Of a stretch of 64,000 nt of DNA, positions 30,156 to 56,940 are shown one piece after another. The notes below the pieces were generated by a model. It saw only the letters and a list, made by a program, of their open reading frames with translations, was not told where the DNA came from and made no database searches. The DNA is taken from positions 62,001 through 126,000 of IMG/VR virus record IMGVR_UViG_3300044821_000131; one strand, given 5' to 3'. A program made the position numbers and the translations under genes. The first letter of the stretch is position 1, and each line of letters starts with the position of its first letter.

Positions 30156-30608
30156 ATGCCTGATCTCATAATCGGTATCTCAGTCCTGCAACCTACTTGG
30201 ATCGATAAGGTCTATCGACTCTGGTTTCAAGCCCAGAAAGCCGACGGCGCAAAAAATCAAGGCTGGATCTTCGCCGTCGATAGCACGTCGGCCAGTACCT
30301 TGACCAAGATGCCCGAATACCCGGATGGCTGTAACTCGATCTGGCACTTCACCAGGCAGGGCGACACACTCAACTGCTCACCTTCGGTGAATTGGATATC
30401 TTGGGGTTTCCACAATGCTGGTAGCTGGACGACGCGCTATGTCGAGATGACCATCGCGGAACAGTCCATGTCGAAAGCGGGCGATGATACCGGCGAAGTC
30501 CCTACACGTTTGCGTATTGGACACACGGTTCATTACGATCTGAATAATGGTGCGGCCGATCCTCAGCAGGTGATCGCCGAGTACCGTCAGAAAGGGGTCC
30601 TGAAGTGA
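30156..30608 (+). CDS. hypothetical protein (DUF6527-like segment)
   Basis: WHFTRQGDTLNCSPSVNW. Confidence 0.6.
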   Translation: MPDLIIGISVLQPTWIDKVYRLWFQAQKADGAKNQGWIFAVDSTSASTLTKMPEYPDGCNSIWHFTRQGDTLNCSPSVNWISWGFHNAGSWTTRYVEMTIAEQSMSKAGDDTGEVPTRLRIGHTVHYDLNNGAADPQQVIAEYRQKGVLK

Positions 30609-32524
30609 ATCGGGCAGCACTCAGAGATGGACAATTCGCTGAGGTGCCCGATAAGGACATCGACTTTGAATTCACCTCTCCCAATCAATTTCTCGGCACC
30701 CATGCCAACTTGATCCCATTGCAGTCCGCAGTACAAGGTGGACGCCTGTTCTACGGCGCTCGATTCGCCAATCAGGCGTTGCCGATCAATAACTCGGAGG
30801 CCCCACTCGTACAGCTAAAGTCAGACGATGATCCGCAAGGCCGATCCTTCGACGAAATCCTCGGCGCCTCGGCTGGCGCCGTACACGCCAAACATGCCGG
30901 TACTGTACATGCTGTTACGCCAGACCATGTTATCGTTAAAACCAAGGATGGAGAAAAAGTGACACACGGATTGTACAACGAATTTCCGTATAACAGAAAG
31001 ACGAAGATCCACAACACTCCGGCGATTAAACCCGGGGATACTGTGGTCCCCGGACAGCTCCTCGCTCATTCCAATTTTACGGACAAGCACGGCACTCTGG
31101 CGCTAGGACTCAATGCTCGCGTCGGACTCGTGCCGTATCTTGGTCGCTCCATGGACGACGCGATTGTGATCAGTGAATCCTTTGCTAAACGTCTGGCCAG
31201 CAACCATGCCTACGGCTACGATCTCGACTACAAGCGTGGTGTGAAGGGCGGCAAAGCGCATCATGTCGGGCTGTTTCCCAACAAGTTCATTAATGACCAG
31301 TTAGATAAGCTGGACGATGAGGGGATCGTGAAGCCGGGACAGATTGTTAATCCTGGTGATCCGATCATCTTGGCCACGCGGCCACGCGTTGTGTCCTCAG
31401 CTTCGGCGCAGTTGGGTCTTCTGTCCAAACATATGAAGAACGCGCGCACGGATGCTTCCGTTCTATGGGAGCACGAAACTCCCGGGCGTGTGGTGGATGT
31501 CCACCGCGGTCGTGGTGGGGTGAAATTGAATATCCATACGGATGTGCCTACGCAGGTGGGCGATAAGCTCGCATTCAGAAGCGGAGGCAAGGCGGTTATA
31601 TCCACCATCCTACCAGACGAACACGTACCGCGCACGGCAGATGGCCAGCCATTGGAGGTTCTGCTAAATCCTCAGAGCATACCATCCCGGGTCAATCCGT
31701 CCTTGGTCTATGAGCTCCTGCTCGGCAAGGTCGCAAAGAAAACCGGACGCCCCTACAAACTGCCAGCCTTTACCAAGAACGGCGAAGCCTGGCACAATGT
31801 CGTCAAAAAAGAACTGGATGATAACGGCCTCACCGATACCGAAGACGTCTTTGACCCCCTCCTGAATAAAAAACTCGAGAACCCCATCACCGTCGGTAAT
31901 GGCTATGTCCTGAAATTACACCACACATCCGCCAGCAAGATAAGTGCTAGAGGTCAAGGTAGTTACAGCTCAGATCAGGAGCCGCTTCATGGTGGTGGTG
32001 AGGGTGGGCAGGGCAAGCGGTTATCGGGACTCGAGTCGGGTGCGTTATTGTCATCTGGGGCGTACGGGGTATTACGGGATGGTGCTACGGTACGTGGGAC
32101 ACGCAACGATCAATTTTGGCGGCAGTTACGTGCGGGGCAGGATCCGGCTGAGCCTGGCAGTTCGTTTGCGTGGGAGAAGTTCCGTGCTTTGTTACAGGGG
32201 TCTGGTTATCAGGCGCGCAAGCTCGGGGCTGGTCGGGAGCGTTTAGGTTTTTGGACGGACAAGGATTTAGCGGAGCGCAAGCCGATCAAGGTGAAGACCG
32301 GGGATATTGTGGATTTGAATTCCCTAGACCCAGTTCGAGGTGGGCTATTTGATCCGGCCCTGACGGGCAATCAGAGCTGGGGTTCGATCGATCTACCCAC
32401 CGCGTTACCAAACCCGGCGGCCGAGGATGTGATTTGCAAGATGTTGGGGCTTACGAATGCGCAGTATCGAAGGATACTGGCTGGAGAAGAGTCTTTACCC
32501 GAGCATTTGCTTCATCCACAATAG
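30605..32524 (+). CDS. rpoB: phage RNA polymerase: beta C-terminal half fused to a beta' N-terminal segment
   Basis: NLIPLQ...RFANQALP, LALGLNARVG..Y.G..MDDAIVISE, GDKLAFRSGGKAVIS.I...P...DG.P.EVLLNP..IPSRVN, YVLKLHH..KISAR; then beta'-like GGLFDP..TG...WGSIDLP. Confidence 0.9.
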   Translation: MNRAALRDGQFAEVPDKDIDFEFTSPNQFLGTHANLIPLQSAVQGGRLFYGARFANQALPINNSEAPLVQLKSDDDPQGRSFDEILGASAGAVHAKHAGTVHAVTPDHVIVKTKDGEKVTHGLYNEFPYNRKTKIHNTPAIKPGDTVVPGQLLAHSNFTDKHGTLALGLNARVGLVPYLGRSMDDAIVISESFAKRLASNHAYGYDLDYKRGVKGGKAHHVGLFPNKFINDQLDKLDDEGIVKPGQIVNPGDPIILATRPRVVSSASAQLGLLSKHMKNARTDASVLWEHETPGRVVDVHRGRGGVKLNIHTDVPTQVGDKLAFRSGGKAVISTILPDEHVPRTADGQPLEVLLNPQSIPSRVNPSLVYELLLGKVAKKTGRPYKLPAFTKNGEAWHNVVKKELDDNGLTDTEDVFDPLLNKKLENPITVGNGYVLKLHHTSASKISARGQGSYSSDQEPLHGGGEGGQGKRLSGLESGALLSSGAYGVLRDGATVRGTRNDQFWRQLRAGQDPAEPGSSFAWEKFRALLQGSGYQARKLGAGRERLGFWTDKDLAERKPIKVKTGDIVDLNSLDPVRGGLFDPALTGNQSWGSIDLPTALPNPAAEDVICKMLGLTNAQYRRILAGEESLPEHLLHPQ

Positions 32525-32528
32525 CGTT

Positions 32529-32909
32529 ATGCGACACATTGCTACATTCATCTTGGCTGATGCCCTCACTAAGATCGCGGCGCCCACCTCGTCCAATGCT
32601 GGTAGTTCCATGGCCGGCGGCCTGTTTCGTGGTGGACTGAAGGCGACACAGTCACAAGGTGGGTTGAAGGGTATGAGTGATTTACCGACTGGGATTCAAC
32701 GGCTCTCCATGTTTGGAAAAGCTTTTGGCTCCAAGGCATTTCGTCCGGCCAAGAATCCATTTTCGGCTATTAATCCTTCCGAGTTAGTTCGAACGGCCAG
32801 GCTACGGCAGATGAGCAAGTCAGCGCCATCAATGGGCAACACGGTGATGAGCAACATTCGAAACAGTTTGGGTGGCGGCGCGGCGATGGCGGCACCGGTG
32901 GCTAAGTGA
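32529..32909 (+). CDS. small G/A/M-rich K-x-A-type protein
   Basis: DALTKIAAP followed by a low-complexity tail. Confidence 0.65.
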   Translation: MRHIATFILADALTKIAAPTSSNAGSSMAGGLFRGGLKATQSQGGLKGMSDLPTGIQRLSMFGKAFGSKAFRPAKNPFSAINPSELVRTARLRQMSKSAPSMGNTVMSNIRNSLGGGAAMAAPVAK

Positions 32910-32924
32910 TTGGGCAAACCCGTC

Positions 32925-32953
32925 TTGACATGTTGGCGAATGGTGCAGATACT
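32925..32953 (+). promoter_or_regulatory. sigma70-like promoter
   Basis: TTGACA-17-GATACT upstream of 32988. Confidence 0.5.
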
Positions 32954-32987
32954 TTGTCAACGATAAATTTTTAAATCTGAAACTACT

Positions 32988-33356
32988 ATGAGCACAGCCA
33001 CACAAGTAAAACGCCGCCGCGGTACGACTGCCCAACACTCCACTTTCACCGGTGCCCTCGGGGAAATCACCGTTGATACCGACATCAAAACCATACGTGT
33101 CCACGATGGCATCCAAGCCGGTGGCTACGTGCTTCTACGTCTCAATGCTGATGGCAGCATCCCTCTTGGTCAGTTCACTGTATCGGCGGATGGCACGACG
33201 ATTACCAGCAGTAGTGGTCAGTCGAACGTGCGGTGGAAAAATGGTCAGTTTCAGATTTTCGATGAGGGCGACGCCACGGCGACACCATCGACGCCATGGC
33301 GTATTCTTGGATCGAACAACGGCTCGATTGTGCTGGCCGGACCGGTGGCCACTTAA
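32988..33356 (+). CDS. short tail-fibre-type protein (Mtd N-terminal-like)
   Basis: QVKRRRGTTAQHSTFTGALGEITVDTD...VHDG..AGG. Confidence 0.8.
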   Translation: MSTATQVKRRRGTTAQHSTFTGALGEITVDTDIKTIRVHDGIQAGGYVLLRLNADGSIPLGQFTVSADGTTITSSSGQSNVRWKNGQFQIFDEGDATATPSTPWRILGSNNGSIVLAGPVAT

Positions 33357-33371
33357 TCTTCATCGCGCGCT

Positions 33372-35519
33372 ATGAAAAAAACATTTGTTGTCTCACTCCT
33401 TCTTTGTATCAGTGCGCTGCTGGGTTTTGGTCAGACCCCAACCAACCTGCCAACACCCGGGATTATTGGATTAGGTGCTAATTCGAACAACGTTATTAGT
33501 GTGCCTCCTAATCCGACCAAGCCTTGGAACTTCAATAATGTGGGTCTGTCGAATGTGACGAGCATTTTTGATGGATCGGGCGTGCCCTATATAAAATCGG
33601 GAGATGTGTTCAACGGCGTCAATGCCACGAATCTCCCACCGGTCGGCACTGCCGCCACGGCGACGACGGCGAGCAATCTAGTGCTCGGTGTTACTGGTGA
33701 CGACCAATCGCTTGGGTCAGCTACTTTAACTGGTCAGCGTTGGGTATTATCTACTCCGTCGCCGAGTATTTATATTGGAATGCCAGGAACTAATCTTTTC
33801 AGTGAGACAAATATCTTGTTTATTTTGAACGATCTTCAAACAAACACAACCACCCCAATTGCTAATTTTACAAACACTCCCTATGGGATTCAACCCATGT
33901 GGATTACGATTGATGCGGGGTGTTTTGGTACACGCAAAACCGATTGGCCTTGGATAACGAACAACCTTGGCTCATTAACGTCAGAATCAAACCGTTTCCC
34001 TCACGGCATCCAATGGATTACTGCGGCTGCTCATACTAATAAAAACCTAGTTTGGGTATCTGGATTATATGCCACTAATTTAACCCCTCCCGGCGCGACT
34101 GAATGGATTGCAGATTCAGCCGGTAATAATCTCCAGCCTTGGACAAACGGAACAGGAACTTTTCCAACGAATATCTATGGACCTTATCAACCAGTGTTTA
34201 CTCCTGATTTTGCTCGTCCGATTCAGGGTCAGTTTAATGGTGGTGACATTCAGGAGTTAATTGCTTGGGGTGTGGATGGATTGCGACTAGCTGAATGTGT
34301 CCCTTCGTCTGGTGCCTCTTATTCGCCGATGGACAAGAAGCAACTAACATTCTGCTTTAGTCGTGCAGCACAAGAAGTCGCTATGCCAATGGTTAATAAC
34401 CCCGGATACTATTCTAATGCAGTTCCTACTAGGGTGATTTTCACCACAAATAGTCCGCTGGCTCTTATGGTCTATACTGACCCACAGTTAAGCTCTTATG
34501 GCCAGTCTTTTGCGATGGGGCAAGAAGTGCGACAGAATGTTACCGCATTTGAGTATGGAAATACACAGCAAGGAACATTAGCGGTTGGCGCAAGGGCTTT
34601 ATATCGCGATTTTGCTGGGCTGGATAAGGCTAATCATGGTGGTTATGTTGATTTTCAATTTGTGAGTGACCCAATCAACGAGGCTATGTTCAGTGCCATC
34701 CCGGAAATGGGTTATCGCAATGACGCCATATTTGGAGCAGGGTGGAACAACTGGTTATTCATTACTAACTCTTGGTTCAAGCTAATCAACCAAGACCCAG
34801 ATCAGATGTGGCCAACTCAAATACCACAGTTTACAACTACCAATTCAAGCAGTGCTTACAAACGAAGACTTGCTAATGGTAGCTGGAGGGTTTCCGTATA
34901 TAATGAGGGTTCGGTAACTATTAATCCTGCATTGACTTGGGATATGATGGGGTGGGATACGAATTTGAACGTTAGAATTACCGCTGTGACTCCTGCCGCC
35001 GGCATTCAGTCAACCAATACCAGAAGCTACACAATGACCACAACAGTTGCTTCGTACCAGCTTTATCAGTTCGATTTGATGCCCGACAACATTGGGGCTG
35101 GACAAATTAAGTTTGTTCCTGGAAATGCTGGGACTGTGGCTAATTCTTTTGGCTCAATGCAAATACTTGGTGCAGACAAGAATAGCCAGTTTGGAGGTTA
35201 CTATGGAAGTAAAAATCCGTCATATCCTGTTACAGTTGGAATGGCTGTAGGTCAAATGGTAGGTGGTGTCCCTTACGATGGATTTACAATGAACAATTCT
35301 GCGGGATTGAATGATGTAACATTTTCAAATGCTATTATTGTACGACGAACCATAGTTTTTTCCAATGCATGGAACTTGAATTTCGCCACCAACAATGCTC
35401 CAAACTTCTCAACAATCAAGAACGTCTCCAGCAACGGACCAATGGTGGACATCTACATGAGCAACGGAACGCCATTCATCTATTACCAGACACCTTCGAC
35501 TGGTGGAATTTTGCCGTAA
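33372..35519 (+). CDS. secreted adhesin-like protein with degenerate GH27 alpha-galactosidase-like domain
   Basis: Signal peptide; WITIDAGC, NRFPHGIQWITAAAH, DIQELIAWGVDGLRLAEC, WRVSVYNEG...LTWDMMG. Confidence 0.7.
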   Translation: MKKTFVVSLLLCISALLGFGQTPTNLPTPGIIGLGANSNNVISVPPNPTKPWNFNNVGLSNVTSIFDGSGVPYIKSGDVFNGVNATNLPPVGTAATATTASNLVLGVTGDDQSLGSATLTGQRWVLSTPSPSIYIGMPGTNLFSETNILFILNDLQTNTTTPIANFTNTPYGIQPMWITIDAGCFGTRKTDWPWITNNLGSLTSESNRFPHGIQWITAAAHTNKNLVWVSGLYATNLTPPGATEWIADSAGNNLQPWTNGTGTFPTNIYGPYQPVFTPDFARPIQGQFNGGDIQELIAWGVDGLRLAECVPSSGASYSPMDKKQLTFCFSRAAQEVAMPMVNNPGYYSNAVPTRVIFTTNSPLALMVYTDPQLSSYGQSFAMGQEVRQNVTAFEYGNTQQGTLAVGARALYRDFAGLDKANHGGYVDFQFVSDPINEAMFSAIPEMGYRNDAIFGAGWNNWLFITNSWFKLINQDPDQMWPTQIPQFTTTNSSSAYKRRLANGSWRVSVYNEGSVTINPALTWDMMGWDTNLNVRITAVTPAAGIQSTNTRSYTMTTTVASYQLYQFDLMPDNIGAGQIKFVPGNAGTVANSFGSMQILGADKNSQFGGYYGSKNPSYPVTVGMAVGQMVGGVPYDGFTMNNSAGLNDVTFSNAIIVRRTIVFSNAWNLNFATNNAPNFSTIKNVSSNGPMVDIYMSNGTPFIYYQTPSTGGILP

Positions 35520-35815: not shown

Positions 35816-35820
35816 CGCGT

Positions 35821-37047: not shown

Positions 37048-37053
37048 CCCATT

Positions 37054-39150: not shown

Positions 39151-39159
39151 AATTGTCAC

Positions 39160-39187: not shown

Positions 39188-39193
39188 CCGGGT

Positions 39194-43717: not shown

Positions 43718-45766
43718 TTGTATATGACCGATCCAACCACGTCTTGGGAAAACGCTGCATTCATTAAATTGGCGCGTCAGGGATCTATCGTGTTTCTGCC
43801 AACGTCCGACGGAAACTACTTGCTGCAGCGCGAGACCAACGGCAACCTGCGCCCACCTGGTGGTGGCAAAGACCGCAGCGACAAAGGGCTGTTCGACTGC
43901 ATTGTGCGCGAGATCCACGAAGAGTTCGGCCTTGATCCGTTGGAAATCAAAAAGAAACTCAAATTCCTCGGGTTTGAATACAGGAAACCTTTCTGGGGAA
44001 ACGCCGTATTCGAGCTGCGACAGCACGGTCTCAAACCCGGCGTCTATCAAGCCAGTAATGATCCCAGTGAGAAAATTCACCTGGTACGTGCCTCCGTTGA
44101 CCATGACGACTACGTAGGTCCCTATCCCCATAAACTGCTCTCGGATGCGGCCAAGGAGAAGGGTGATGACCTTTTCAAATCGGCGGAAGATAAATCCAAA
44201 GAAGATCGGGAAATCATTGCGGTCGACTTCGATGGCGTTTTGGCGAAGCACATGGAAAATCAGACCTCGCTTGGTGAACCGGTGCCCGCCATGATCGACA
44301 AAGTGCAATCTTGGATCGCTGAGGGTAAGCATGTCGTAATCTTCACTGCCCGGGCGCATGATCCGAAGAATGTACCGGCCATCAAGGCTTGGATCAAGGA
44401 GCACGGTTTGGGGGATCTCGATGTTACCAACCGAAAGATTCCGGAGATGTCGGTGTTCTATGACGACAAGGCGGTGCAGATTCGGAAGAATACAGGCAAA
44501 GTGGCACGGTCGATAATCGTCTGCCCCGTGGACGATTTGGACAAATCCGCGGCAGTCACCCCGCAAGTCACCCCGCAAGTCACCCCGCAAGTCACCCCGC
44601 AAGTCACCCCGCAAGTCACCCCGCAAGTCGCGAGTCCCACCACCGGTCCCGAAGCCATCGGACTTGCTTTGAGCAATCTCGATCTTAATCAAGAGGAGGT
44701 GCGGGCCAATGCAGAGATCAAACGCGGGCTGAAGACGAAACGCGGCTCGGCCGTGAAGCGTCTCGGATTCATTCAAGGATTCCGTCGGACCGGTGTACAC
44801 CCGAAAGATCTGATGCTGAAACAGGTGCCCGTCATTCCGCCACAATTCCGGCCATTCTCTGTCGCAGGCGACGTATTCATTCCCGGTGATGCCAACGAAC
44901 TCTATCGCGATCTGATCAACATGGTCGGCGTGCACAAAGAGCTTCAACGTAATTTGGGTGAAGGTGGTGCAGCCTCAAATAAATTGAGGATATATGATGC
45001 GATGCGCGCCGTGTATGGTTACGGGGAACCAACGGCGCCGAAGACTAAGGAGCGTGGAGTATCAGGCTTTCTCAAGAAGCTGACGGGTAGCAATCCTAAA
45101 TTCAGCTATTCGAACCGGCATCTATTGAGTCGTGATATGGATTTTGTGGGACGTGGTGTCGTCGGTGTCGATCCTGATATGAATTTGGACGAGATTGGAG
45201 TTCCGGAGGAAATGGCGTGGAAGATTTATGCCCCGTATATTCAGCGCCGTTTAGTGCGCAGTGGCATGGGCCTTGAGGCTGCAGTGCGATCTGTTCGTGA
45301 TAAGAACGAACAAGCACACAGGATGTTGCTGGAGGAATCTAAAGAACGTCCCGTCATGTATTCTCGTAGCCCGGCTTGGCATAAATTTTCGGTGCTGGGA
45401 GGCTATCCGAAAATTATTCCTGGTAACACTGTTATGGTTAATCCGTTGGTTACAAGCGGCTTAGGTATGGATTTTGATGGCGACACCTGTAATATTCATG
45501 TTCCGGCACTTGCTGACGCGGTGGATGACGTCAAGAATAAATTGATGCCATCGAGGATGTTATTTTCGACCAAAGGTCGGGATCAGGTGATGCCTACGCC
45601 CAAGCAGGAAATGATTCTCGGTATGGCCTCGGCGCAGCAACGTCCTTCAAAGCGTCCGCCGGTATCTTTTCCTGACGAGGCCTCGGCACTAGCGGCCATC
45701 CATAACGGTTCGGTGCGTTTAAGTGATGAGGTTCAGATTGGTAAGGCAAAGCCGATCATAGCATGA
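43718..45766 (+). CDS. rpoC: Nudix + HAD phosphatase + VTPQ linker + RNA polymerase beta' catalytic fragment
   Basis: Nudix GGGKDRSDKGLFDCIVREIHEEFGL; HAD IAVDFDGVL; beta' VPVIPPQFRP, LLSRDMDFVGRGV, SRSPAWH, GMDFDGD (45464-45484). Confidence 0.9.
   Translation: MYMTDPTTSWENAAFIKLARQGSIVFLPTSDGNYLLQRETNGNLRPPGGGKDRSDKGLFDCIVREIHEEFGLDPLEIKKKLKFLGFEYRKPFWGNAVFELRQHGLKPGVYQASNDPSEKIHLVRASVDHDDYVGPYPHKLLSDAAKEKGDDLFKSAEDKSKEDREIIAVDFDGVLAKHMENQTSLGEPVPAMIDKVQSWIAEGKHVVIFTARAHDPKNVPAIKAWIKEHGLGDLDVTNRKIPEMSVFYDDKAVQIRKNTGKVARSIIVCPVDDLDKSAAVTPQVTPQVTPQVTPQVTPQVTPQVASPTTGPEAIGLALSNLDLNQEEVRANAEIKRGLKTKRGSAVKRLGFIQGFRRTGVHPKDLMLKQVPVIPPQFRPFSVAGDVFIPGDANELYRDLINMVGVHKELQRNLGEGGAASNKLRIYDAMRAVYGYGEPTAPKTKERGVSGFLKKLTGSNPKFSYSNRHLLSRDMDFVGRGVVGVDPDMNLDEIGVPEEMAWKIYAPYIQRRLVRSGMGLEAAVRSVRDKNEQAHRMLLEESKERPVMYSRSPAWHKFSVLGGYPKIIPGNTVMVNPLVTSGLGMDFDGDTCNIHVPALADAVDDVKNKLMPSRMLFSTKGRDQVMPTPKQEMILGMASAQQRPSKRPPVSFPDEASALAAIHNGSVRLSDEVQIGKAKPIIA
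44555..44626 (+). repeat. 12-nt coding repeat x6 (VTPQ)
   Basis: GTCACCCCGCAA x6. Confidence 0.95.
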
Positions 45767-46365: not shown

Positions 46366-46366
46366 A

Positions 46367-48470: not shown

Positions 48471-48472
48471 TT

Positions 48473-49606: not shown

Positions 49607-49611
49607 ATTTT

Positions 49612-52110
49612 ATGGCAATCGTACCTGTCAATGATTTGAAGCAGCGGTTTCTCACAGGAGATTATCCGTCGGCTAAGGACTTCGCGGATCTGATCGACAC
49701 CATTGTGGCGATCAAAAATACTGCCATTGTGAATGGATCTTTGGGTTTATCCGCGTTCGCGCCGCAAGCTCACAATGAAGTGTTGCAAACTGACAGTTCT
49801 GGAAATGTGATCGTGTCAGCCATGAATTATCCAGTGGTGACCGGTGATGGAAGTCTGACCGGAACTTATCCGAGTATATCGGTTGTCAGTGATGGATCAG
49901 GAATCACGTCTGGCATTCAGTCTCAACATATACGGAATCAGGCGGTGAGTCTTCGACATTACAATCAGGCCGAAGCTGCCGGAGCTCCGATTGGAGCCAG
50001 CCTCACTTGGACCGGCGCCGGCTTCAACTGGCTCAGCGCGGTGTCATCGTCTGCATTGCAACGCGTCGCGGCATCGGGTGGCGTGCGTAAATTCAAATCT
50101 GCATTAATACCATTGCCCACGGTGCCGGCTACTTATACTTCTGGAGGATTTTCACAAGTCGTGGCCCATGGTTTAGGTTTCTCTCCGGACACTTGGCGCG
50201 CGGCGTTGATCTGCATCAATCCCGGAGGTTCGGCGGGATACGCTCAAAACAAAGAGCTGCCACTGAACTTGTTCGTAGGCACCGCCAACGCACCGGTCTT
50301 CTTCACGGATGTCGACAGTACGAATATCACTTGCGTGGCGAATTTCGTTTCGGTCGGTGCCGGTGCCGACTACAACATGTCCGTGTATGATGGCACCGTG
50401 CCGGGACAACTGGATACATTGTCGATGACCGGTGGTGATTTCGCCAGATGGTATCTGGTTCTCTACGCGGAGACCTATATCAATGGCGATGGCTTTGGTG
50501 CTGTGACTGGTTGGACATCGGCGTTGACGGCCTTCGATCATGTTATTACTCCCCTGAGTATCACCAATGTCCAAGGTGTGGTTCCAAACGTTTACAGTGT
50601 GGTGCTGCGCAATGTGACAACGGACGGTACTTATAGCCCAGGGGACGAGGTTCCGATCTCCGAGTTTACCACGGCAGCGTATGAGCCAGCCTTCACCGTT
50701 AAGGCTACGTCCGCGGCCTTTACGGTCACGGCCAACACGGCGTATACCACAATTCAGGTGGGGAGCTATGTAATAACGTTGGATAATTGGCAAGCGGTGG
50801 TGCGTGCCATGTACGCAACGGGCAATGCCACGTCGATTCAATCGCCTACCGCCATTCAATTGCATGGAGTCCGTAATGCGGTACCTTATAACGGAAGCAT
50901 CTATGCTTCGCATGTTCTGGGTACGAATCAGGCTGATGCCAGTCTGGGCAATTATGGGGACTCCCCGACGGTAGTGTCGTCGGTGCTTTCCAGCATTAAT
51001 GTTCAGAACGGCAACATGATCATTGGCGCCGGCATCGTGAGTGGAAATCCTTTTCCATCTTCTGATCTTGCAGTCGGCGCCGGGAAAGGCTGTTACAACA
51101 CATTCGGCCGCGCGCAGATGAACGCGGTACGCTGGCCTACATTGGGTGTTAATGCGATCATGTGGATGCGCGGAAACGATACATTCTTCACCGACGACGC
51201 CAGTCTGACTTCCGCGGGTCCCGTCGAGACGGTTGGCATACCTTATGGCGCAGACATTGTGACAGCATACTTTCCCGACACGGCACCTCCGTCTTTTCAG
51301 ACGTATGGCGCGGTACAAGTCAGTGCTAACAATCCGGTGGTGTACAATGTTTGGGGCTACAATGTTTCTAAGACCAGTCCGCTCACATTCTATCCGTATC
51401 CACAACATTCGGCCATCGTGCAGGTTGATGACAGCGGATCCGCACCAGGTGGAACATCTCATCCGGATCTGTATGTGGTTGGATCCCAGTTTTATCCGCT
51501 TCCGATCATCGGCCTATGTGCCAAGATGGATAACTGTCGTTTCGGTAAGTATTCGTACATATCGAGTGTCTACACGTTTGTCGGTCCGGCCGCGGGATCT
51601 GGATCCGGAGGCTCCCCTACCAGCAGCGTGAACAGTCCGGTTGGAGCGATCAATTGGTTCAATGCCAACATCGTCAACATCACGGCGCGCAACGCCGATA
51701 TCTTTGCGTCCAACCTGGCCTATAACCCGATTTATTATGTGATGGTCCGCTACAATCCGGTGAAGAATCTGTTCTATGTGATCGATGCGTTGACCGGTCT
51801 GCTCCACATTTACAGCTTGGTCATCGCCGGGCATACTGGTGCCGCGACATTGCCCTACTGGCTGGGTAGTGGATCGACGGCGCTGGATTACACCAAATTG
51901 ACGTACACCGGATCCTACGTGCTTCCGATCGGTCCGTCGCGCTATGATACCCTGTTGTTTGAGGACAAGGGAACGCTCAACTGGGAGCCTTCAATGCGGG
52001 ATTCGTGGACGGTGGAATTTGATCTGGTGTCAGGCGCGGAGATATCGATCTGTGTGGCACGCGGCGGCAGTAATGAGATCACCCGGATTCCGTGGATATA
52101 TCCAATCTAA
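49612..52110 (+). CDS. long tail fibre-like protein
   Basis: N-terminal TGDYPSAKDFADLIDT; ~100-aa module shared with 48473. Confidence 0.75.
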   Translation: MAIVPVNDLKQRFLTGDYPSAKDFADLIDTIVAIKNTAIVNGSLGLSAFAPQAHNEVLQTDSSGNVIVSAMNYPVVTGDGSLTGTYPSISVVSDGSGITSGIQSQHIRNQAVSLRHYNQAEAAGAPIGASLTWTGAGFNWLSAVSSSALQRVAASGGVRKFKSALIPLPTVPATYTSGGFSQVVAHGLGFSPDTWRAALICINPGGSAGYAQNKELPLNLFVGTANAPVFFTDVDSTNITCVANFVSVGAGADYNMSVYDGTVPGQLDTLSMTGGDFARWYLVLYAETYINGDGFGAVTGWTSALTAFDHVITPLSITNVQGVVPNVYSVVLRNVTTDGTYSPGDEVPISEFTTAAYEPAFTVKATSAAFTVTANTAYTTIQVGSYVITLDNWQAVVRAMYATGNATSIQSPTAIQLHGVRNAVPYNGSIYASHVLGTNQADASLGNYGDSPTVVSSVLSSINVQNGNMIIGAGIVSGNPFPSSDLAVGAGKGCYNTFGRAQMNAVRWPTLGVNAIMWMRGNDTFFTDDASLTSAGPVETVGIPYGADIVTAYFPDTAPPSFQTYGAVQVSANNPVVYNVWGYNVSKTSPLTFYPYPQHSAIVQVDDSGSAPGGTSHPDLYVVGSQFYPLPIIGLCAKMDNCRFGKYSYISSVYTFVGPAAGSGSGGSPTSSVNSPVGAINWFNANIVNITARNADIFASNLAYNPIYYVMVRYNPVKNLFYVIDALTGLLHIYSLVIAGHTGAATLPYWLGSGSTALDYTKLTYTGSYVLPIGPSRYDTLLFEDKGTLNWEPSMRDSWTVEFDLVSGAEISICVARGGSNEITRIPWIYPI

Positions 52111-52113
52111 TTT

Positions 52114-52848: not shown

Positions 52849-52851
52849 CAT

Positions 52852-52879
52852 TTGACAGATTCCTCCGCACGCGTATAGT
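52852..52879 (+). promoter_or_regulatory. sigma70-like promoter
   Basis: TTGACA-16-TATAGT. Confidence 0.6.
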
Positions 52880-52938
52880 AGCAACAGCATCAGCAATCAC
52901 GCTGATGCTAACAAAGTCCGTATAACGGCAAGCCTACT

Positions 52939-53799
52939 ATGAAAATATTAAATGATTCGTTCGAGCTACGCATTCTCGTGAATGGAAACAAACTCCGTGA
53001 ATATGGTGTTGACAATAAAACTTACGTGGAAGGTCGTCCCGCCATCACTTATACGATTGAATTCAAAAACAATGGTCCCAGGCGTGTACTCTTCGTGCCG
53101 GCGGTGGACGGGTTGAGTGTTCTGGATGGCAACCCTGCAACCCACGAATCCAACGGTTACATCTGCGACGGTTACGCCGCCATCCAGATTCCCGGGTGGC
53201 GCACCAGTCACACGCACTGTCAGGACTTCAAGTTCACTGAGCCTCAAGCCAGCTACGCCGGCAAGACTCAATCCGTTGCTAATTGCGGCGTGATCGGTGG
53301 GCTTGTTTTTAACGAAAAGATCAAACCGGCTCAGAATGCCTCAGTGTTCAGCCACACGACACCTGTTGTGGTGATACAGCCGGCATATCCGAATTATCAG
53401 CCTTGGCATCCTTGGTGGTGGAATCAACCTATGTGTGTTGGAGCAAGTCCAGCTTGGCCCTATCAAATGTCCTCCAGTTGTAGTGCTTCAGTGTCCTCTA
53501 CTCCGGACGCTGCTGTTTGCCAATTTCAGGCTTCCGATCCTTGTGGACCAGTTACTTCGGCCTGCAACAACTTTACTGAAGTAACGGAGTACAATCTAGG
53601 TACTGGTGCTGGGCACGCCCGTGAGAGTCACGTAGATTTAGTTCAATTCGAAAAGGGCGATCTGTGTGCCACGTTTGATATATTCTACACGGATCGGGCA
53701 GGTCTCGAAAAGGCCGGCGTTAAGTTAGACAAGGCTCCGTTAGCGGTAGGCGTGCGTCATCCTCAGTCTTTCAGTGGATTTTGTCAGATTCCGAAGTAA
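52939..53799 (+). CDS. large-phage hypothetical protein
   Basis: ILVNG..LREY...Y.I...N....V..AVDGLSVLDG..GYI...IPGWR...GVIG. Confidence 0.75.
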   Translation: MKILNDSFELRILVNGNKLREYGVDNKTYVEGRPAITYTIEFKNNGPRRVLFVPAVDGLSVLDGNPATHESNGYICDGYAAIQIPGWRTSHTHCQDFKFTEPQASYAGKTQSVANCGVIGGLVFNEKIKPAQNASVFSHTTPVVVIQPAYPNYQPWHPWWWNQPMCVGASPAWPYQMSSSCSASVSSTPDAAVCQFQASDPCGPVTSACNNFTEVTEYNLGTGAGHARESHVDLVQFEKGDLCATFDIFYTDRAGLEKAGVKLDKAPLAVGVRHPQSFSGFCQIPK

Positions 53800-53804
53800 A
53801 TGAG

Positions 53805-53834
53805 AACCGGCGCAGATTCTTGTCTGCGCCGGTT
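53805..53834. terminator. perfect 12-bp inverted repeat overlapping the next -35 element
   Basis: AACCGGCGCAGA-6-TCTGCGCCGGTT. Confidence 0.6.
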
Positions 53835-53860
53835 GACAAACCACTGGTTCGTATTATATT
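53833..53860 (+). promoter_or_regulatory. sigma70-like promoter
   Basis: TTGACA-16-TATATT, 7 nt before ATG 53868. Confidence 0.55.
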
Positions 53861-53867
53861 CAAACAC

Positions 53868-54581
53868 ATGAAAAATCACAAACTGTATGCCTTCACCGGG
53901 CTCATGTTCAGCGGAAAAGATTATGTCGCAGAACAGGCCAAGTTAAAACCCCTAAGTGTAGCCAAGCCGATCTACGAGCTTGTTGAATACTTTACGGGCT
54001 ACACGCGTAAGAACCCCGAAGTACCAGGCATTCGCCGGTTGTGGCAGCAGATTGGTCAATGGGGCTGGGGTGACATCAGCGACAAAACACCGCTTACGAT
54101 TGAACGGGTGCTCATGACCAGCCAGATTCGGATGATGGGCGGGCATATGACCAAGAGTTTCAAGTGGGTGGACTGGGAACGTTATGGTCAGCGTAAGGAT
54201 TTTTGGATCAACATTTGTCTGTCCGCACTACGTCAGGAGTTATTGGATATCGATAATAATCAGTCCGTGTTCGACACCAACTCTCCGGGTGGACGCTACG
54301 CAATCACCAACGCCAGGTTCCATCATGAAGTCACGCCTCTCAAAGAGTTCGGGTTCCAGACGTATCACGTCCTCTGTAGTGAGGCAACCCGGCAGGAGCG
54401 TATGGCGTTGAAAGGTTACAAACAATCGGCGTTGGAAGCTAACGACATATCAGAACAGATGGCAAAGGATCTGATGTCAACGGTTAATGATGATCATGTG
54501 ATATGGTCTGATCATCGGGACATGCCAGAAGGTCATCTTTATTGGACGGTTGCTGAATTTTGCAACATGACGAACAAATAA
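53868..54581 (+). CDS. deoxynucleoside monophosphate kinase
   Basis: P-loop FTGLMFSGKD, RRLWQQIG, ITNARFHHE; start placed at ATG 53868. Confidence 0.75.
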   Translation: MKNHKLYAFTGLMFSGKDYVAEQAKLKPLSVAKPIYELVEYFTGYTRKNPEVPGIRRLWQQIGQWGWGDISDKTPLTIERVLMTSQIRMMGGHMTKSFKWVDWERYGQRKDFWINICLSALRQELLDIDNNQSVFDTNSPGGRYAITNARFHHEVTPLKEFGFQTYHVLCSEATRQERMALKGYKQSALEANDISEQMAKDLMSTVNDDHVIWSDHRDMPEGHLYWTVAEFCNMTNK

Positions 54582-54596
54582 ATCCGACGGAAGAGT

Positions 54597-54634
54597 AACG
54601 CCTGCAAGTCAATCTTTACTTGCAGGCGTTTTTT
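54597..54634 (+). terminator. intrinsic terminator
   Basis: AACGCCTGCAAGT/ACTTGCAGGCGTT 13-bp stem followed by a T tract. Confidence 0.85.
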
Positions 54635-54653
54635 ATATACCGTTCGTCTCGGA

Positions 54654-55094
54654 ATGCTAAACCGATCTCCAGCAGCAATATTGGCCAGATCAAAAACCCA
54701 CGCCAACCCAGGACTGTACTCCCGGGCTCGTGCGCGGGTCATCCGATACGTCGGGGATTCCAACGAAGATAAAGATGAGTATTCACGTATTGGCACTCCA
54801 GAGAAAATCACCCCGAGGCCCATCCCGTATACACCGGCACCATTGCCGGTTACAGGTGTCGATTATGGACTTATCACACAACCCGTAGGCATCACAATCG
54901 ATTACGATTTCAATCCCGATGCCTTCGCTGCGATTCACACACTCAACGATGATTATCTTACCATTGATGTGACACCCGAAGAGTATGATGACTATGGCTA
55001 CGTCGCGTCGCCGGTAGGCATATCTGAGGACTTCGGTCTGATAAGTGAACCGCTGGTGCCGATCGTAGATTTTGGCCCCTTGGTAGTATCCTGA
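54654..55094 (+). CDS. protein with basic N-terminus and acidic D(Y/F)G repeats
   Basis: DYGLITQP, DYGYVASP, DFGLISEP, DFGPLV. Confidence 0.65.
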   Translation: MLNRSPAAILARSKTHANPGLYSRARARVIRYVGDSNEDKDEYSRIGTPEKITPRPIPYTPAPLPVTGVDYGLITQPVGITIDYDFNPDAFAAIHTLNDDYLTIDVTPEEYDDYGYVASPVGISEDFGLISEPLVPIVDFGPLVVS

Positions 55095-55095
55095 T

Positions 55096-56940
55096 ATGCG
55101 TGCGATTGATCTATACGTCAACTCAGTGTTGCCACCCGATCTTCGGTCTAACAATCGTGTGCTCAACAAGAAGAATATCGAGTCGGTACTGGCCGACGTA
55201 GCTCGACGTTATCCTGAGCAGTACGCTGACATATCAAAGTCGCTTTCGGACATCGGGCGCAAAGCGGCTTACCTACAAGGAGAAACTCTTAATTTATCGG
55301 ACTTTCAACCGGTACTGGATCGAGACGGTTTGCTGAAGCAAATGGATCATGAGGTGCGAGCGTCGGATGCCGAGACTAAAAATCCTGACGAGCGTGAAAA
55401 GAAGCGACTCATTATCTGGGCCAAGTATTCTACAGCCATTGAGAAATCCACTTCCGAAAACGCGCGACATACTAATCTCGGACGTTCGGTGACTTCTGGG
55501 GCGCGCGGTAACGCCCTGCAATTGAAAGCAATTTTGTCCACGCCGGCGCTCTATACTGATTACAAAGACAGAGTTATTCCGATGTTTATCAGACATGGTT
55601 TCGGGGAAGGTCTGCGTCCCGCTGAATACTTGGCCTCGTCTTTCGGTACACGTCGCTCTGTGATCTCAACCAAGAGCAGCACGGCCCGCGGCGGAGACTT
55701 CATGAAGCAGATTATAGCGGCTACCACACCGATAATCGTCACCGAAGATGATTGTGGTACGAGTAACGGTCTCGACTTCGATGTTACCGATCATGAGATT
55801 CAAGGTCGAGTGCTGGCCAAGGAAGCGGGTGGAGTGGCGGTTGGTACGACAATCGACAAACATGTAATACAAGCTTTACATAAAGCGGGTGTGAAGCGAA
55901 TCATTGCGCGAAGTCCGATGACGTGTACTTCGAAGAGTGGAATCTGTTCTCATTGTTTGGGCACTCTGCCGTCCGGACATTTTGCACCCCGAGGATACAC
56001 CGCCGGGACCACGGCCGCTCAGGCAGTCGGAGAACCAGTTGTGTCGGGAGCTCTGGCGGCCAAGCACACCGGCGGATCTTTTAAAGGTTCACAAAAACAA
56101 TTTGCTGGATTCGACACGATCACGCAGCTCGTGCAATCGCCGGAAACATTTCCGAATAAGGCTCCGTTGGCCGAGACCTCCGGTAAGGTCGATAGTATCG
56201 AAGATGCACCGCAAGGTGGCAAGTACGTCACGATAGGTGAAAATAAACATTATCTGTTGCCCGATTTCGCCCCGTTGGTCAAAGTGGGTGATACTGTCGA
56301 AGCCGGCACGCCTCTTAGCGAGGGCGTGGCTGATGTGGCCGATGTGGTACGCCTGCGCGGTCTGGGCGAGGGCCGCCGATATTATGTGGATCGCCTGAAA
56401 CAAGCTATGGAAGAATCAGGGGCGGGTCACCCGAGCAAATTAAATCTGGAACTGATCGCCCGCGGGACCTTAGACCACGTCAAAATCGACGATCCTGACG
56501 GCTTGGGCGGGTACCTTCCCGATGACGTCGTGTCCTACGGAACAATGTCCAATTCGTACGTGCAACCCAAATCGGCCACCATGATGAGTCCCGACCAAGC
56601 CGTAGATAAATACTTGCACGCCCCGGTATTGCACTTCACTATCGGTACCAAAATGACACCGAAGATGATAGATCGGTTGAAAAGTGCTGGTATTAAAGGA
56701 GTTGTAGCATCCGGAGAAGAACAGCCGAAATTCCATCCGGAGATGGTGCGGCTGCGCGCGGCGGCGCACAACAATCCTGACTGGTTGGCTCGGATGCACT
56801 CGAGTTATTTGATGAGCAATCTGGATGAATCGGCATCCCGGGGCAGGGACACGGACACTATGGAGAACACGCATTTTGCGCCCAGGCTTGCAATCGGCAA
56901 GAACTTTGGCAAAAATATTGACACGACTGGAAAGTTCTAA
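55096..56940 (+). CDS. rpoC: phage RNA polymerase beta' C-terminal fragment
   Basis: SGARGN, F.EGL..AEY..S.FG.R (bridge helix), VTEDDCGT, RSPMTC...GICSHCLG, AAQAVGEP...KHTGG (trigger loop). Confidence 0.9.
   Translation: MRAIDLYVNSVLPPDLRSNNRVLNKKNIESVLADVARRYPEQYADISKSLSDIGRKAAYLQGETLNLSDFQPVLDRDGLLKQMDHEVRASDAETKNPDEREKKRLIIWAKYSTAIEKSTSENARHTNLGRSVTSGARGNALQLKAILSTPALYTDYKDRVIPMFIRHGFGEGLRPAEYLASSFGTRRSVISTKSSTARGGDFMKQIIAATTPIIVTEDDCGTSNGLDFDVTDHEIQGRVLAKEAGGVAVGTTIDKHVIQALHKAGVKRIIARSPMTCTSKSGICSHCLGTLPSGHFAPRGYTAGTTAAQAVGEPVVSGALAAKHTGGSFKGSQKQFAGFDTITQLVQSPETFPNKAPLAETSGKVDSIEDAPQGGKYVTIGENKHYLLPDFAPLVKVGDTVEAGTPLSEGVADVADVVRLRGLGEGRRYYVDRLKQAMEESGAGHPSKLNLELIARGTLDHVKIDDPDGLGGYLPDDVVSYGTMSNSYVQPKSATMMSPDQAVDKYLHAPVLHFTIGTKMTPKMIDRLKSAGIKGVVASGEEQPKFHPEMVRLRAAAHNNPDWLARMHSSYLMSNLDESASRGRDTDTMENTHFAPRLAIGKNFGKNIDTTGKF

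What the first reader, a model, noticed from the sequence alone, without database searches (positions are those of the whole stretch)
30605..56940. Multisubunit RNA polymerase split at unusual points over three genes about 12 kb apart
Seen: 30605-32524 starts mid-beta, runs to the beta C-terminus and continues into a beta' N-terminal segment (GGLFDP..TG...WGSIDLP) without the Cys4 zinc-binding domain that sits between these motifs in bacterial beta'. 43718-45766 carries the beta' clamp and catalytic core. 55096-56940 carries the bridge helix, trigger loop and second Zn site. The beta N-half, alpha and sigma are not recognisable in the window. Established: phiKZ-like jumbo phages split beta and beta' into several subunits. 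Inference: the beta/beta' junction fusion and bacterial-like motifs suggest an independently fragmented enzyme.
Basis: partly seen in the sequence, partly recalled or inferred. Interest (0 to 1): 0.75.

Follow-up and report, generated by a model that had tools for sequence, protein, structure and literature searches.

The report
Five-piece phage RNA polymerase with add-ons
A 204-kb phage from peat encodes its own bacterial-type RNA polymerase cut into five scattered genes, with the end of the beta subunit welded to the start of beta-prime and small RNA/nucleotide-cleaving enzymes attached at the cut ends; this layout is common in metagenomes, and I found no paper that describes it.

Summary
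The three window ORFs are intact pieces of one multisubunit RNA polymerase (RNAP): beta C-half plus the first ~100 residues of beta' without its Cys4 zinc ribbon; beta' clamp/catalytic core; and beta' C-half. (1) The beta N-half lies in two more genes 46 kb upstream of the window's first RNAP gene, one carrying a full intein, so the enzyme has five genes spread over 75 kb. (2) The catalytic-core gene starts with a Nudix hydrolase, a HAD-like phosphatase and a repeat linker. The first beta gene ends in a 2H phosphoesterase. (3) A sigma-like gene exists; alpha does not. The enzyme is not phiKZ-type by sequence: it scores near bacterial RNAP and matches phiKZ/AR9 only at short motifs or not at all. 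It belongs to a large metagenomic clade (at least 120 protein clusters with the same beta-C/beta'-N junction). The nearest cultured relatives are Salmonella phage Arash and Vibrio phage D69, where beta and beta' are fused through the catalytic site. A tree indicates the split after the junction arose once from that fused state. However, two of the four breakpoints coincide with phiKZ/AR9 and cyanobacterial split sites. Verdict: a new variant of a known kind, and clearly functional.

The parts
30605..32524 (+). RNAP piece 3 of 5: beta C-half (DPBB, flap, beta C-terminus; aa 1-~520) fused to the beta' N-terminus (aa ~547-635). GTG start overlaps the stop of the upstream ORF by 4 nt.
   Evidence: Pfam PF00562 E 4e-52; PDB beta chains E 8e-56; E. 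coli beta 649-1320; all 120 best homologs keep the same C-terminal segment
32243..32509 (+). beta' N-terminal segment (zipper-like region, GGLFD at 32339-32368, WGSIDLP... at 32378-32416) with the Cys4 zinc ribbon deleted between the two motifs
   Evidence: Profile A1 vs PDB hits only beta' N-termini; matches the N-termini of Va2 / RHph_TM30 beta' in two stretches separated by ~36 aa; alignment A5; one Cys in the whole protein
43718..45766 (+). RNAP piece 4 of 5: Nudix + HAD-like + linker + beta' clamp/catalytic core in one ORF (probable ATG start at 43724)
43724..44185 (+). Nudix hydrolase domain (Nudix box with REIHEEFGL at 43859-43933)
   Evidence: PF00293 26 bits, above the 21.1 cut-off; AF2 model pLDDT 85.8; Foldseek PDB top hits MutT, NUDT16, RppH, Dcp2, probability 1.00
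44192..44509 (+). small HAD-like phosphatase module (DFDGV at 44222-44242, FTAR, YDD motifs)
   Evidence: phrog_1238 E 9e-16, phrog_415 (polynucleotide kinase family) E 2e-6; weak PDB 2obb match; hundreds of stand-alone homologs; alpha/beta fold at pLDDT >90
44554..44629 (+). perfect 12-nt x 6.3 tandem repeat encoding the (QVTP)n linker between the accessory domains and beta'
   Evidence: TRF 100% matches, score 152; translation
44636..45763 (+). beta' middle part: clamp core, DPBB-A and catalytic loop (MDFDGDT at 45467-45487); ends at the cyanobacterial gamma/beta' split site
   Evidence: PDB beta' chains E 3e-43, cyanobacterial gamma 188-551; E. coli beta' 180-511; every clade homolog ends at this point
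55096..56940 (+). RNAP piece 5 of 5: beta' C-half (bridge helix region ~55498-55713, trigger loop ~56014-56076, second Zn site 55747-55764 and 55924-55962) plus a clade-specific C-terminal ~130 aa
   Evidence: PF04998 E 4e-11; PDB beta' E 3e-39, cyanobacterial beta' from residue 4-11; Arash gp216 205 bits; motifs located

Best explanation
The window holds three of the five genes of one functional, bacterial-type two-barrel RNA polymerase of a ~204-kb tailed phage from peat.

Gene order on the genome:
1. beta-N1 with a C-terminal 2H phosphoesterase.
2. beta-N2, interrupted by a complete Hint+LAGLIDADG intein.
3. beta-C with the first ~100 residues of beta' attached.
4. Nudix-HAD-linker-beta' core.
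5. beta'-C.

Shown:
- Homology of each piece, intact catalytic and structural motifs, and a single full complement.
- Conservation of this architecture in many related genomes.
- A sigma-like gene, and no alpha.

Inferred history: an ancestor of this clade fused beta to beta', the state kept in phages Arash and D69, where one 1525-aa protein runs from beta to the DFDGD loop. The fused gene was later cut again at surface-exposed linkers rather than at the old beta/beta' boundary, so the beta' N-terminus stayed on beta. The beta C-terminus and the beta' N-terminus build the clamp together, so this piece is a natural structural unit. The covalent tether may compensate for the missing alpha platform.

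Inferred mechanism: the pieces assemble non-covalently into a core that uses the phage sigma-like factor on phage promoters. By analogy with Arash, the enzyme is packaged in the virion and enters the cell with the DNA. The free ends created by the cuts serve as attachment points for small hydrolases. These ride on the polymerase and act on RNA ends or on nucleotide signals.
For: Identity of the pieces.

One set only, five genes.

Motifs intact (translations):
- beta GGK, beta' MDFDGD, and the second Zn site.
- Nudix REx2EE, HAD DxDGV, and two HxT motifs in the 2H domain.

Junction is genuine beta' N-terminus lacking the Zn ribbon.

Conservation:
- At least 678 homologs of the beta-C piece at E<=1e-10. 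The best 120 are 55-82% identical, on contigs up to 225 kb (among the listed longest contigs, the largest are ~185-225 kb), and all keep the junction.
- Same gene order and similar spacing in a relative with a 72%-identical beta-C piece.

Fused state in Arash/D69 and some metagenomic members.

Tree:
- The clade is separated from bacteria at support 100/98.
- Fused forms are basal and split forms form one clade (95/87).

Accessory domains at cut ends vary among relatives:
- Nudix, HAD, 2H/Acb1-like, InPase and LigD_N.
- Also lysozyme and glucosaminidase.

Nudix fold.

Sigma-like gene. No alpha.

Host-type promoter and terminator consensus sites are not enriched around the genes.

Virion packaging in the relative: in Arash, gp206 is the most-detected and gp216 the fifth most-detected virion protein by spectral count, and sigma-like gp10 is also in the particle (PMC10585845).

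Precedent for a hydrolase fused to a phage virion RNAP subunit: the HD domain in AR9 (PMC7598289).
Against: - No expression, proteomic or biochemical data exist for this phage. The only sequencing runs found are DNA metagenomes.
- Virion packaging is carried over from a relative only 22-32% identical.
- The tree samples only Gammaproteobacteria and Bacillota as cellular references and has long branches. The root, and therefore the polarity fused-to-split, is an inference.
- The substrates of the Nudix, HAD-like and 2H domains are unknown.
- One of the two conserved beta lysines of E. coli (K1073) appears to be Thr here. This is my reading against E. coli beta from memory; I did not survey it across the clade.
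- Two breakpoints coincide with phiKZ/AR9 sites, which could instead mean shared ancestry.
Confidence: 0.8

Rival explanations
1. It is a phiKZ/AR9-type (jumbo-phage 'non-canonical') split RNAP by descent. The shared breakpoints are inherited, and sequence similarity has simply been lost on the phiKZ side.
For: - The beta-C piece starts within ~13-18 residues of where AR9 gp089 and phiKZ gp71 start.
- The beta' break after the catalytic barrel is the one common to phiKZ vRNAP, phiKZ nvRNAP and cyanobacteria (PMC7598289).
- No alpha or omega in either group.
- A hydrolase domain is fused to a subunit in AR9 vRNAP.
Against: - No detectable match of the beta' core to phiKZ or AR9 at E<=10. Only short motif matches (14 and 28 bits) for beta-C, against 133-139 bits to E. 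coli.
- One RNAP set instead of two.
- A sigma70-related factor is present, whereas phiKZ-type phages have none (PMC7824862).
- In the basal relatives Arash and D69, beta is not split at that site, so the beta break looks secondary within the clade.
Confidence: 0.12
2. The pieces are decaying remnants of a captured bacterial rpoBC operon and no longer form an enzyme.
For: - The pieces are scattered over 75 kb and interleaved with unrelated genes.
- The beta' zinc ribbon is lost and alpha is absent.
Against: - No internal stops.
- Every universal region is present exactly once and the catalytic motifs are intact.
- Piece boundaries and lengths are conserved in more than 100 divergent homologs.
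- Gene order is conserved in a relative.
- The nearest cultured relative carries the proteins abundantly in virions.
Confidence: 0.02
3. The separately encoded pieces are re-joined after translation by split inteins (protein trans-splicing) into conventional beta and beta' chains.
For: - Inteins are very common in this clade's RNAP genes, with at least seven insertion sites in beta-C homologs and several in beta' core homologs.
- beta-N2 of this genome has one.
Against: - The intein in beta-N2 is contiguous. It runs from Cys1 with a TxxH block to ...GN followed by Ser+1, and has 52 residues of C-extein after it.
- The termini of the five pieces carry 2H, Nudix or ordinary RNAP sequence, not Int-N or Int-C halves.
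Confidence: 0.03
4. The enzyme is functional but not a virion enzyme. It is made after infection for middle/late genes, and the fused hydrolases serve nucleotide housekeeping rather than injected counter-defence or RNA-end processing.
For: - No proteomic data for this phage.
- Arash's authors themselves note that abundant proteins may contaminate particles.
- Nudix and HAD enzymes are common housekeeping enzymes in phages.
Against: - In Arash, gp206 is the most-detected and gp216 the fifth most-detected protein by spectral count (3516 and 1210 spectra), and the sigma-like protein is also in the particle.
- Some relatives carry lysozyme or glucosaminidase domains on RNAP pieces, which is typical of ejected virion proteins.
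- The RNAP genes sit among probable tail-fibre/structural genes (weak).
Confidence: 0.25

Closest known systems
Salmonella phage Arash gp206 + gp216 (and Vibrio phages D69/D181/D148)
   Same: - Same RNAP lineage: best annotated matches at 314 and 162 bits.
- Same beta-to-beta' covalent junction and same deletion of the beta' zinc ribbon.
- Same break after the catalytic barrel.
- Homologous sigma-like factor, portal and terminase.
   Different: - In Arash, one 1525-aa protein runs from the beta N-terminus to the DFDGD loop. Here that protein is cut into four genes dispersed over 64 kb.
- This genome has added Nudix, HAD-like and 2H domains and an intein.
- Only 22-32% identity between the two.
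mReC, the multisubunit-RNAP-encoding Caudovirales of Weinheimer & Aylward 2020 (PMC7481178)
   Same: - Tailed phages, some over 200 kb, from metagenomes.
- Their beta/beta' are alignable to cellular enzymes and form a clade outside Bacteria.
- TerL of Pfam PF03237 is found here too.
   Different: - That study selected long, COG-like beta and beta' genes. The paper's text does not contain the words 'split' or 'intein', and I saw no mention of accessory domains in the parts I read.
- The Gp23-type capsid reported for some mReC was not detected here.
- Membership could not be checked directly.
phiKZ / AR9 split virion and non-virion RNAPs
   Same: - Jumbo-phage two-barrel RNAP without alpha or omega, encoded by 4-5 dispersed genes.
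- The beta break and the beta' break after the barrel fall at the same places (PMC7598289).
- AR9 vRNAP has a hydrolase (HD) domain fused to a subunit.
   Different: - No usable sequence similarity.
- One set rather than two.
- A sigma-like factor instead of gp68/gp226-type subunits.
- The sources read describe no beta'-N-on-beta junction for phiKZ-type enzymes.
Cyanobacterial/plastid rpoC1-rpoC2 (gamma/beta') split
   Same: The break between window ORFs 43718-45766 and 55096-56940 maps to it. The ORF 43718-45766 aligns to gamma up to residue ~551 of 624, and ORF 55096-56940 aligns from residue 4-11 of cyanobacterial beta'.
   Different: A cellular enzyme with alpha, omega and a zinc ribbon, and without the other three breaks. 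No evidence of specific kinship.
Natural rpoB-rpoC fusion of Helicobacter/Wolinella and engineered tethered E. coli beta::beta' (from my own knowledge, not retrieved here)
   Same: The beta C-terminus is covalently continued into the beta' N-terminus, and the enzyme remains functional.
   Different: There the whole beta' follows in one chain. Here only ~100 residues of beta' follow, or about 500 in Arash.

Membership tests
Two-barrel multisubunit RNAP (beta/beta' type) | beta' barrel with the metal-binding DFDGD loop | tested here: met
   MDFDGDT at window 45467-45487; PF00623 E 9e-20; aligned to the NADFDGD region of B. subtilis beta'
Two-barrel multisubunit RNAP (beta/beta' type) | beta barrel/hybrid-binding domain (Rpb2 domain 6) with a conserved lysine | tested here: met
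   PF00562 E 4e-52, positions 2-362 of 373; GGK at 31574-31603. The second lysine of E. coli appears to be Thr here (my reading; not surveyed further)
Two-barrel multisubunit RNAP (beta/beta' type) | bridge helix, trigger loop and second Zn site in the beta' C-half | tested here: met
   Alignment to beta' 720-942 and 1154-1282; cysteines at 55747-55764 and 55924-55962
Bacterial RNAP core (alpha2-beta-beta'-omega) | alpha subunit as assembly platform | tested here: not met
   PF01000 and PF01193 give no match in the complete genome, while both ring in 14/14 control genomes
Bacterial RNAP core (alpha2-beta-beta'-omega) | Cys4 zinc ribbon in the beta' N-terminus | tested here: not met
   ~35-residue deletion in alignment A5; one Cys in the 639-aa protein
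phiKZ/AR9-type split phage RNAP | sequence membership in the phiKZ/AR9 beta- and beta'-like families | tested here: not met
   beta' core: no match at E<=10. beta-C: 14 and 28 bits on short motifs. PHROG phiKZ-type families match only partially
phiKZ/AR9-type split phage RNAP | two paralogous sets (virion and non-virion) | tested here: not met
   One set in the complete genome
phiKZ/AR9-type split phage RNAP | beta' split directly after the catalytic barrel; beta split before the conserved 'LIP...R..M....QA' region | tested here: met
   beta'; beta; offset ~13-18 residues
phiKZ/AR9-type split phage RNAP | no sigma-family factor | tested here: not met
   Gene at C1:151391-152092 hits Sigma70_r3 at 27 bits, above the 25.3 cut-off, and is homologous to Arash gp10. 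The Sigma70_r2 model gave no match
Arash-like RNAP clade | beta C-terminus covalently continued into the beta' N-terminus, zinc ribbon deleted | tested here: met
Arash-like RNAP clade | groups with Arash/D69 apart from bacterial and other phage beta' | tested here: met
   Tree of 36 beta' cores, branch support 100/98. Cellular sampling is limited
Arash-like RNAP clade | RNAP and sigma-like protein packaged in the virion | not testable with these tools
   Known only for Arash (PMC10585845)
mReC (Weinheimer & Aylward 2020) | RNAP clade sister to or outside Bacteria; TerL PF03237; MCP PF07068 | tested here: inconclusive
   Outside the sampled bacteria; TerL PF03237 at 23.2 bits; no PF07068 hit. 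The mReC sequences themselves were not available for comparison
Nudix hydrolases | Nudix fold and a Nudix box with the REx2EE catalytic helix | tested here: met
   PF00293 above the cut-off; REIHEEFGL; Foldseek probability 1.00 to MutT, NUDT16, RppH and Dcp2. Substrate not determinable
2H phosphoesterases (LigT / Acb1-like) | two HxT/S motifs in a 2H fold | tested here: met
   PF13563 at 38 bits, above the 27 cut-off; PF23474 (Acb1) E 8e-4; HIT and HVT motifs in the translation. The fold was not modelled
Inteins | Cys/Ser at position 1, TxxH block, C-terminal Asn followed by a Ser/Thr/Cys extein, insertion in a conserved host motif | tested here: met
   beta-N2...IEGPE|CFSDD..., TPNH...WSGN|SERIGV. 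Hint and LAGLIDADG_3 hits are weak. The penultimate His is replaced by Gly

The most novel reading that the evidence does not exclude
In this clade, cutting the polymerase genes creates free chain ends. These ends are used as a modular docking system. Interchangeable small enzymes are tethered to polymerase pieces and so are packaged and injected with the virion RNAP. The domains seen are Nudix, HAD-like phosphatase, 2H/Acb1-like phosphoesterase, pyrophosphatase, LigD-type phosphoesterase and cell-wall hydrolases. They would act in the first seconds of infection, either on nascent or host RNA ends or on defence signalling nucleotides.

A second novel reading concerns the two breakpoints shared with phiKZ/AR9. 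They may mark this bacterial-like, sigma-using clade as the missing link from which the highly diverged phiKZ-type polymerases descend.
Probability: 0.3. Interest if true: 0.8.

Novelty: new variant of a known kind. Interest (0 to 1): 0.62.

Why it matters
Phage multisubunit RNAPs are used to study how little a cellular-type polymerase needs, and they bear on debates about the origin of transcription. This clade is bacterial-like enough to align residue by residue. Yet it works without alpha, omega or the beta' zinc ribbon, tolerates four cuts and many inteins, and keeps a sigma-like factor.

It gives a natural series from fused, to partly split, to five pieces. That series can test:
- which covalent links matter for assembly;
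- why the same linkers are cut repeatedly, in cyanobacteria, phiKZ/AR9 and here;
- whether enzymes fused to the cut ends are delivered with the polymerase.

Cultured relatives (Arash on Salmonella, D69-type phages on Vibrio) make these questions testable at the bench.

Tried and rejected
Searches that found nothing:
- A DNA-level search of the phage collection found nothing.
- A single-protein scan of IMG/VR found no close relatives.
- The 2H tail has no sequence match in the PDB.
- Profile A1 finds nothing in phiKZ, AR9 or the E. coli chromosome by the genome-scan route. It does hit E. coli-type beta' N-termini in the PDB search.
- Rfam found no group I or group II introns in the window, only a tRNA.
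- A T7-like single-subunit RNAP model gave no hit, but its control rang nowhere, so this test is void.

Dead ends and weak results:
I put E. coli first in the query alignment, so it returned only Gammaproteobacteria. The tree therefore lacks broad bacterial and archaeal sampling.
- A simple k-mer search of intergenic regions for a phage promoter motif found nothing convincing.
- Sigma-70 promoter-like and terminator-like consensus sites are at shuffle level.
- ESM-Atlas look-ups of two intervening genes gave only weak leads: GH27-like and tail-fibre-like.

Explanations rejected:
- Pseudogene decay and split-intein re-ligation (see the rival explanations).
- Recent capture from a bacterial host. 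Identity to bacteria is only 26-30% and the clade branches outside the sampled bacteria.

Full report
**Setting.** The window is bases 62001-126000 of a 204,257-bp virus record with direct terminal repeats, judged complete. The DNA is held by a peat metagenome run, and a relative by a rhizosphere run. In my longest-ORF gene call, 231 of 275 ORFs lie on the + strand. Most large proteins have no PHROG or Pfam match. It is a very divergent tailed phage with recognisable DNA polymerase, SbcC-like protein, tail fibre and baseplate proteins, terminase and portal.

- *ORF 30605-32524 (639 aa)* matches RNA_pol_Rpb2_6 at E 4e-52. It aligns to bacterial beta from about E. coli 649 to 1320. Its tail is genuine beta' N-terminus. 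A profile of the last 130 residues of 53 family members hits, in the whole PDB, only N-termini of beta' or gamma chains plus one chance hit (best E 0.002). The same profile matches the N-termini of the full-length beta' of Vibrio phage Va2 and Rhizobium phage RHph_TM30 in two stretches about 36 residues apart. In the five-way alignment, E. coli, Va2 and RHph_TM30 have the CxC...CxxC ribbon in that gap. This phage and Arash have nothing there. The whole protein contains a single cysteine.
- *ORF 43718-45766.* Residues 305-682 are beta' 180-511 in E. coli numbering, with MDFDGD.
- *ORF 55096-56940* is beta' from about 590 to the C-terminal conserved regions. It has the bridge helix, the trigger loop and the second zinc site, and lacks the E. 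coli SI3 insertion.

*More genes.* The rest of beta is encoded 46 kb upstream of the window's first RNAP gene.
- C1:43441-44985 (514 aa) carries the beta N-terminus (E. coli 34-195; Arash gp206 30-262), followed by a 2H phosphoesterase with both HxT motifs.
- C1:45712-47163 (483 aa) carries beta 420-565. A complete intein is inserted in the universally conserved ...ETPEG motif. It starts with Cys, has a TxxH block and a LAGLIDADG region, and ends in Asn followed by Ser. Another 52 residues of beta follow.
- Searches with Pfam, PHROG, Arash and E. coli queries find each region once only. This is one enzyme in five genes spread over 75 kb.

*Accessory domains.* The first 300 residues of ORF 43718-45766 are not RNAP.
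- A Nudix domain scores above the Pfam cut-off with an intact REx2EE helix. The AlphaFold model has pLDDT 85.8. The best PDB fold matches are MutT, NUDT16, RppH and Dcp2.
- A ~100-residue HAD-like module carries DxDGV, T and DD motifs.
- A perfect 12-nt x 6.3 tandem repeat encodes a (QVTP)n linker.

*Partners.* A homolog of Arash gp10, annotated there as a sigma factor, lies at C1:151391-152092 and passes the Sigma70_r3 cut-off. Alpha-subunit models find nothing, although they ring in all 14 control genomes.

**Relatives.** The only annotated phages with good matches are Salmonella phage Arash and Vibrio phages D69, D181 and D148. In Arash a single 1525-aa protein, gp206, covers what is here four genes: beta-N1, beta-N2, beta-C with the beta' N-terminus, and the beta' core. 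gp216 corresponds to beta'-C.

In the large protein collection, the beta-C piece has at least 678 homologs at E<=1e-10. The best 120 are 55-82% identical. Most are about 640 aa. They lie on contigs up to 225 kb, and the largest listed contigs are about 185-225 kb. All of them carry the beta' N-terminal tail.

The other pieces vary in architecture.
- *beta' core homologs* come in three forms. Some are bare (~375 aa). Some have N-terminal extensions of 100-760 aa holding Nudix, HAD-like, 2H/Acb1-like, InPase, LigD_N or glucosaminidase domains. Some are still fused to beta-C. All end at the same residue.
- *beta-N1 homologs* likewise are bare (33), carry a 2H tail (23), or carry other tails (64). 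The other tails include InPase, Nudix, lysozyme plus Nudix, and a group-II-intron-type reverse transcriptase.
- *Inteins* occur at seven or more sites in beta-C alone.
- *Gene order.* A relative with a 72%-identical beta-C has the same order and similar spacing: beta-C, 9.7 kb, Nudix-beta' core, 8 kb, beta'-C. A more distant relative has beta-C and the core only 4.3 kb apart.
- *The Nudix-HAD pair* also occurs as a two-domain cassette in many unrelated large proteins.

**Relation to known split polymerases.** By sequence the enzyme is not phiKZ-type.

| Piece | Arash | E. coli | AR9 | phiKZ |
|---|---|---|---|---|
| beta' core | 162 bits | 133 bits | no match at E<=10 | no match at E<=10 |
| beta-C | 314 bits | ~139 bits | 28 bits | 14 bits |

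A maximum-likelihood tree of 36 beta' cores separates the clade (this phage, metagenomic relatives, Arash and D69) from the sampled bacteria plus Va2 and RHph_TM30, with support 100/98. Within the clade, the forms still fused to beta-C are successive basal branches. All split forms make one group (95/87). This fits a single cutting event in a fused ancestor. Caveats are midpoint rooting, long branches, and only two bacterial phyla sampled.

The breakpoints are not all unusual.
- The break after the catalytic barrel is the cyanobacterial gamma/beta' site. The review of jumbo-phage RNAPs states it is also common to phiKZ-type virion and non-virion enzymes (PMC7598289).
- The beta-C piece begins about 35 residues before the conserved LIP...R..M....QA region. 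AR9 gp089 begins about 22 residues before it, and phiKZ gp71 about 17.
- So two of four cuts coincide with phiKZ/AR9 cuts.
- The cut inside the beta lobe, and the cut about 100 residues into beta' that leaves the beta/beta' junction intact, have no counterpart in the papers I read.
- From memory, not tested here: the cut about 100 residues into beta' lies where Thermus beta' carries its large non-conserved insertion. This agrees with the offsets of the Thermus chains and suggests a permissive surface site.

**Mechanism.**

*Shown.*
- All universal RNAP modules are present once and intact.
- The architecture is conserved across many genomes.
- The accessory domains have intact catalytic motifs.

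*Inferred.*
- The five chains assemble non-covalently into a core, as the four or five chains of phiKZ/AR9 enzymes do (PMC8287921).
- The beta-C/beta'-N chain is a ready-made clamp unit and a tether that may stand in for alpha.
- The sigma-like protein directs the core to phage promoters. Host-type promoter and terminator consensus sites are not enriched (weak evidence).

*By analogy.*
- In Arash, gp206 is the most-detected and gp216 the fifth most-detected virion protein, and gp10 is also in particles (PMC10585845). The enzyme is therefore probably packaged and injected for early transcription.
- Lysozyme and glucosaminidase domains on RNAP pieces of some relatives fit ejected proteins.
- The hydrolases at the cut ends would then be delivered with the polymerase. 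Their targets are open. Candidates are RNA 5' ends for the Nudix domain (its fold neighbours include RppH, NUDT16 and Dcp2), cyclic-phosphate ends or cyclic-oligonucleotide signals for the 2H domain, and phosphorylated ends for the HAD-like module.
- AR9's virion RNAP carries an HD hydrolase of equally unknown role.

**Novelty.**
- *Known.* Phage multisubunit RNAPs, their splitting, the mReC clade (PMC7481178) and Arash are all known.
- *Not found described.* Several features appear in no paper I found: the combination of a beta::beta' junction fusion with secondary cuts, the five-gene dispersal, the loss of the zinc ribbon, the modular hydrolase tails, the intein load, and the coincidence of two cuts with phiKZ/AR9 sites in a bacterial-like, sigma-using enzyme.
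- *Rating.* I rate it a new variant of a known kind, of solid interest to people who work on transcription and phage biology.

Noticed in passing
G000:C1:46240-47004 (L011:10240-11004), outside the window: A complete Hint + LAGLIDADG intein sits in the beta-N2 gene, inserted in the conserved ...ETPEG motif of beta. It has Gly instead of the usual penultimate His. Relatives carry inteins at at least seven other sites in the beta-C piece.
   Followed up: partly
G000:C1:44455-44985 (L011:8455-8982), outside the window: A 2H phosphoesterase domain (LigT-like, with weak similarity to the anti-CBASS protein Acb1 family) is fused to the C-terminus of the first beta piece. The same position in relatives holds InPase, Nudix, lysozyme or a reverse-transcriptase domain.
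   Followed up: partly
window 44554-44629: A perfect 12-nt tandem repeat (6.3 copies) encodes a Pro/Thr/Gln linker. The 100% copy identity suggests recent expansion and possible length variation between strains.
   Followed up: partly
window 23142-23218: A single tRNA-Met (CAT) gene. It lies partly inside the mechanical ORF 21954-23180 and just downstream of a GtrB-like glycosyltransferase region.
   Followed up: no
window 55696-56091: Arash gp7, a 226-aa 'structural protein', shows 27% identity (E 2e-7) to a stretch inside the beta' C-half around the second Zn site. It may be a small paralogous fragment of beta' in Arash.
   Followed up: no
window 33372-35516 and 49612-52107: Large ORFs between the RNAP pieces give weak ESM-Atlas leads to GH27 alpha-galactosidase-like and tail-fibre-like proteins. 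In a relative, the same interval holds an Mtd_N-domain protein next to a 1407-aa protein. The RNAP genes seem embedded among tail/host-recognition genes.
   Followed up: partly
window 21954-25140 and 3923-6865: Two GtrB-like glycosyltransferase-domain proteins, and a 981-aa protein with an acetyltransferase domain.
   Followed up: no
window 30605-30608: The GTG start of the beta-C gene overlaps the TGA stop of the upstream 150-aa ORF (GTGA), which suggests translational coupling. The public gene call for this protein starts 13 codons later, but homologs align from residue 2-3.
   Followed up: partly
G000:C1:44995-45711 (L011:8995-9708), outside the window: A 238-aa gene with an N-terminal DUF3008 domain is wedged exactly between the two beta N-half genes. 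Its function is unknown.
   Followed up: no
L121 (Rhizobium phage RHph_TM30) and L122 (Vibrio phage Va2): Other cultured phage groups (Kleczkowskaviridae, Va2) encode unsplit ~1130-1190-aa beta' proteins that keep the Cys4 ribbon. In the beta' core tree they fall on the bacterial side of the branch that separates the clade.
   Followed up: partly
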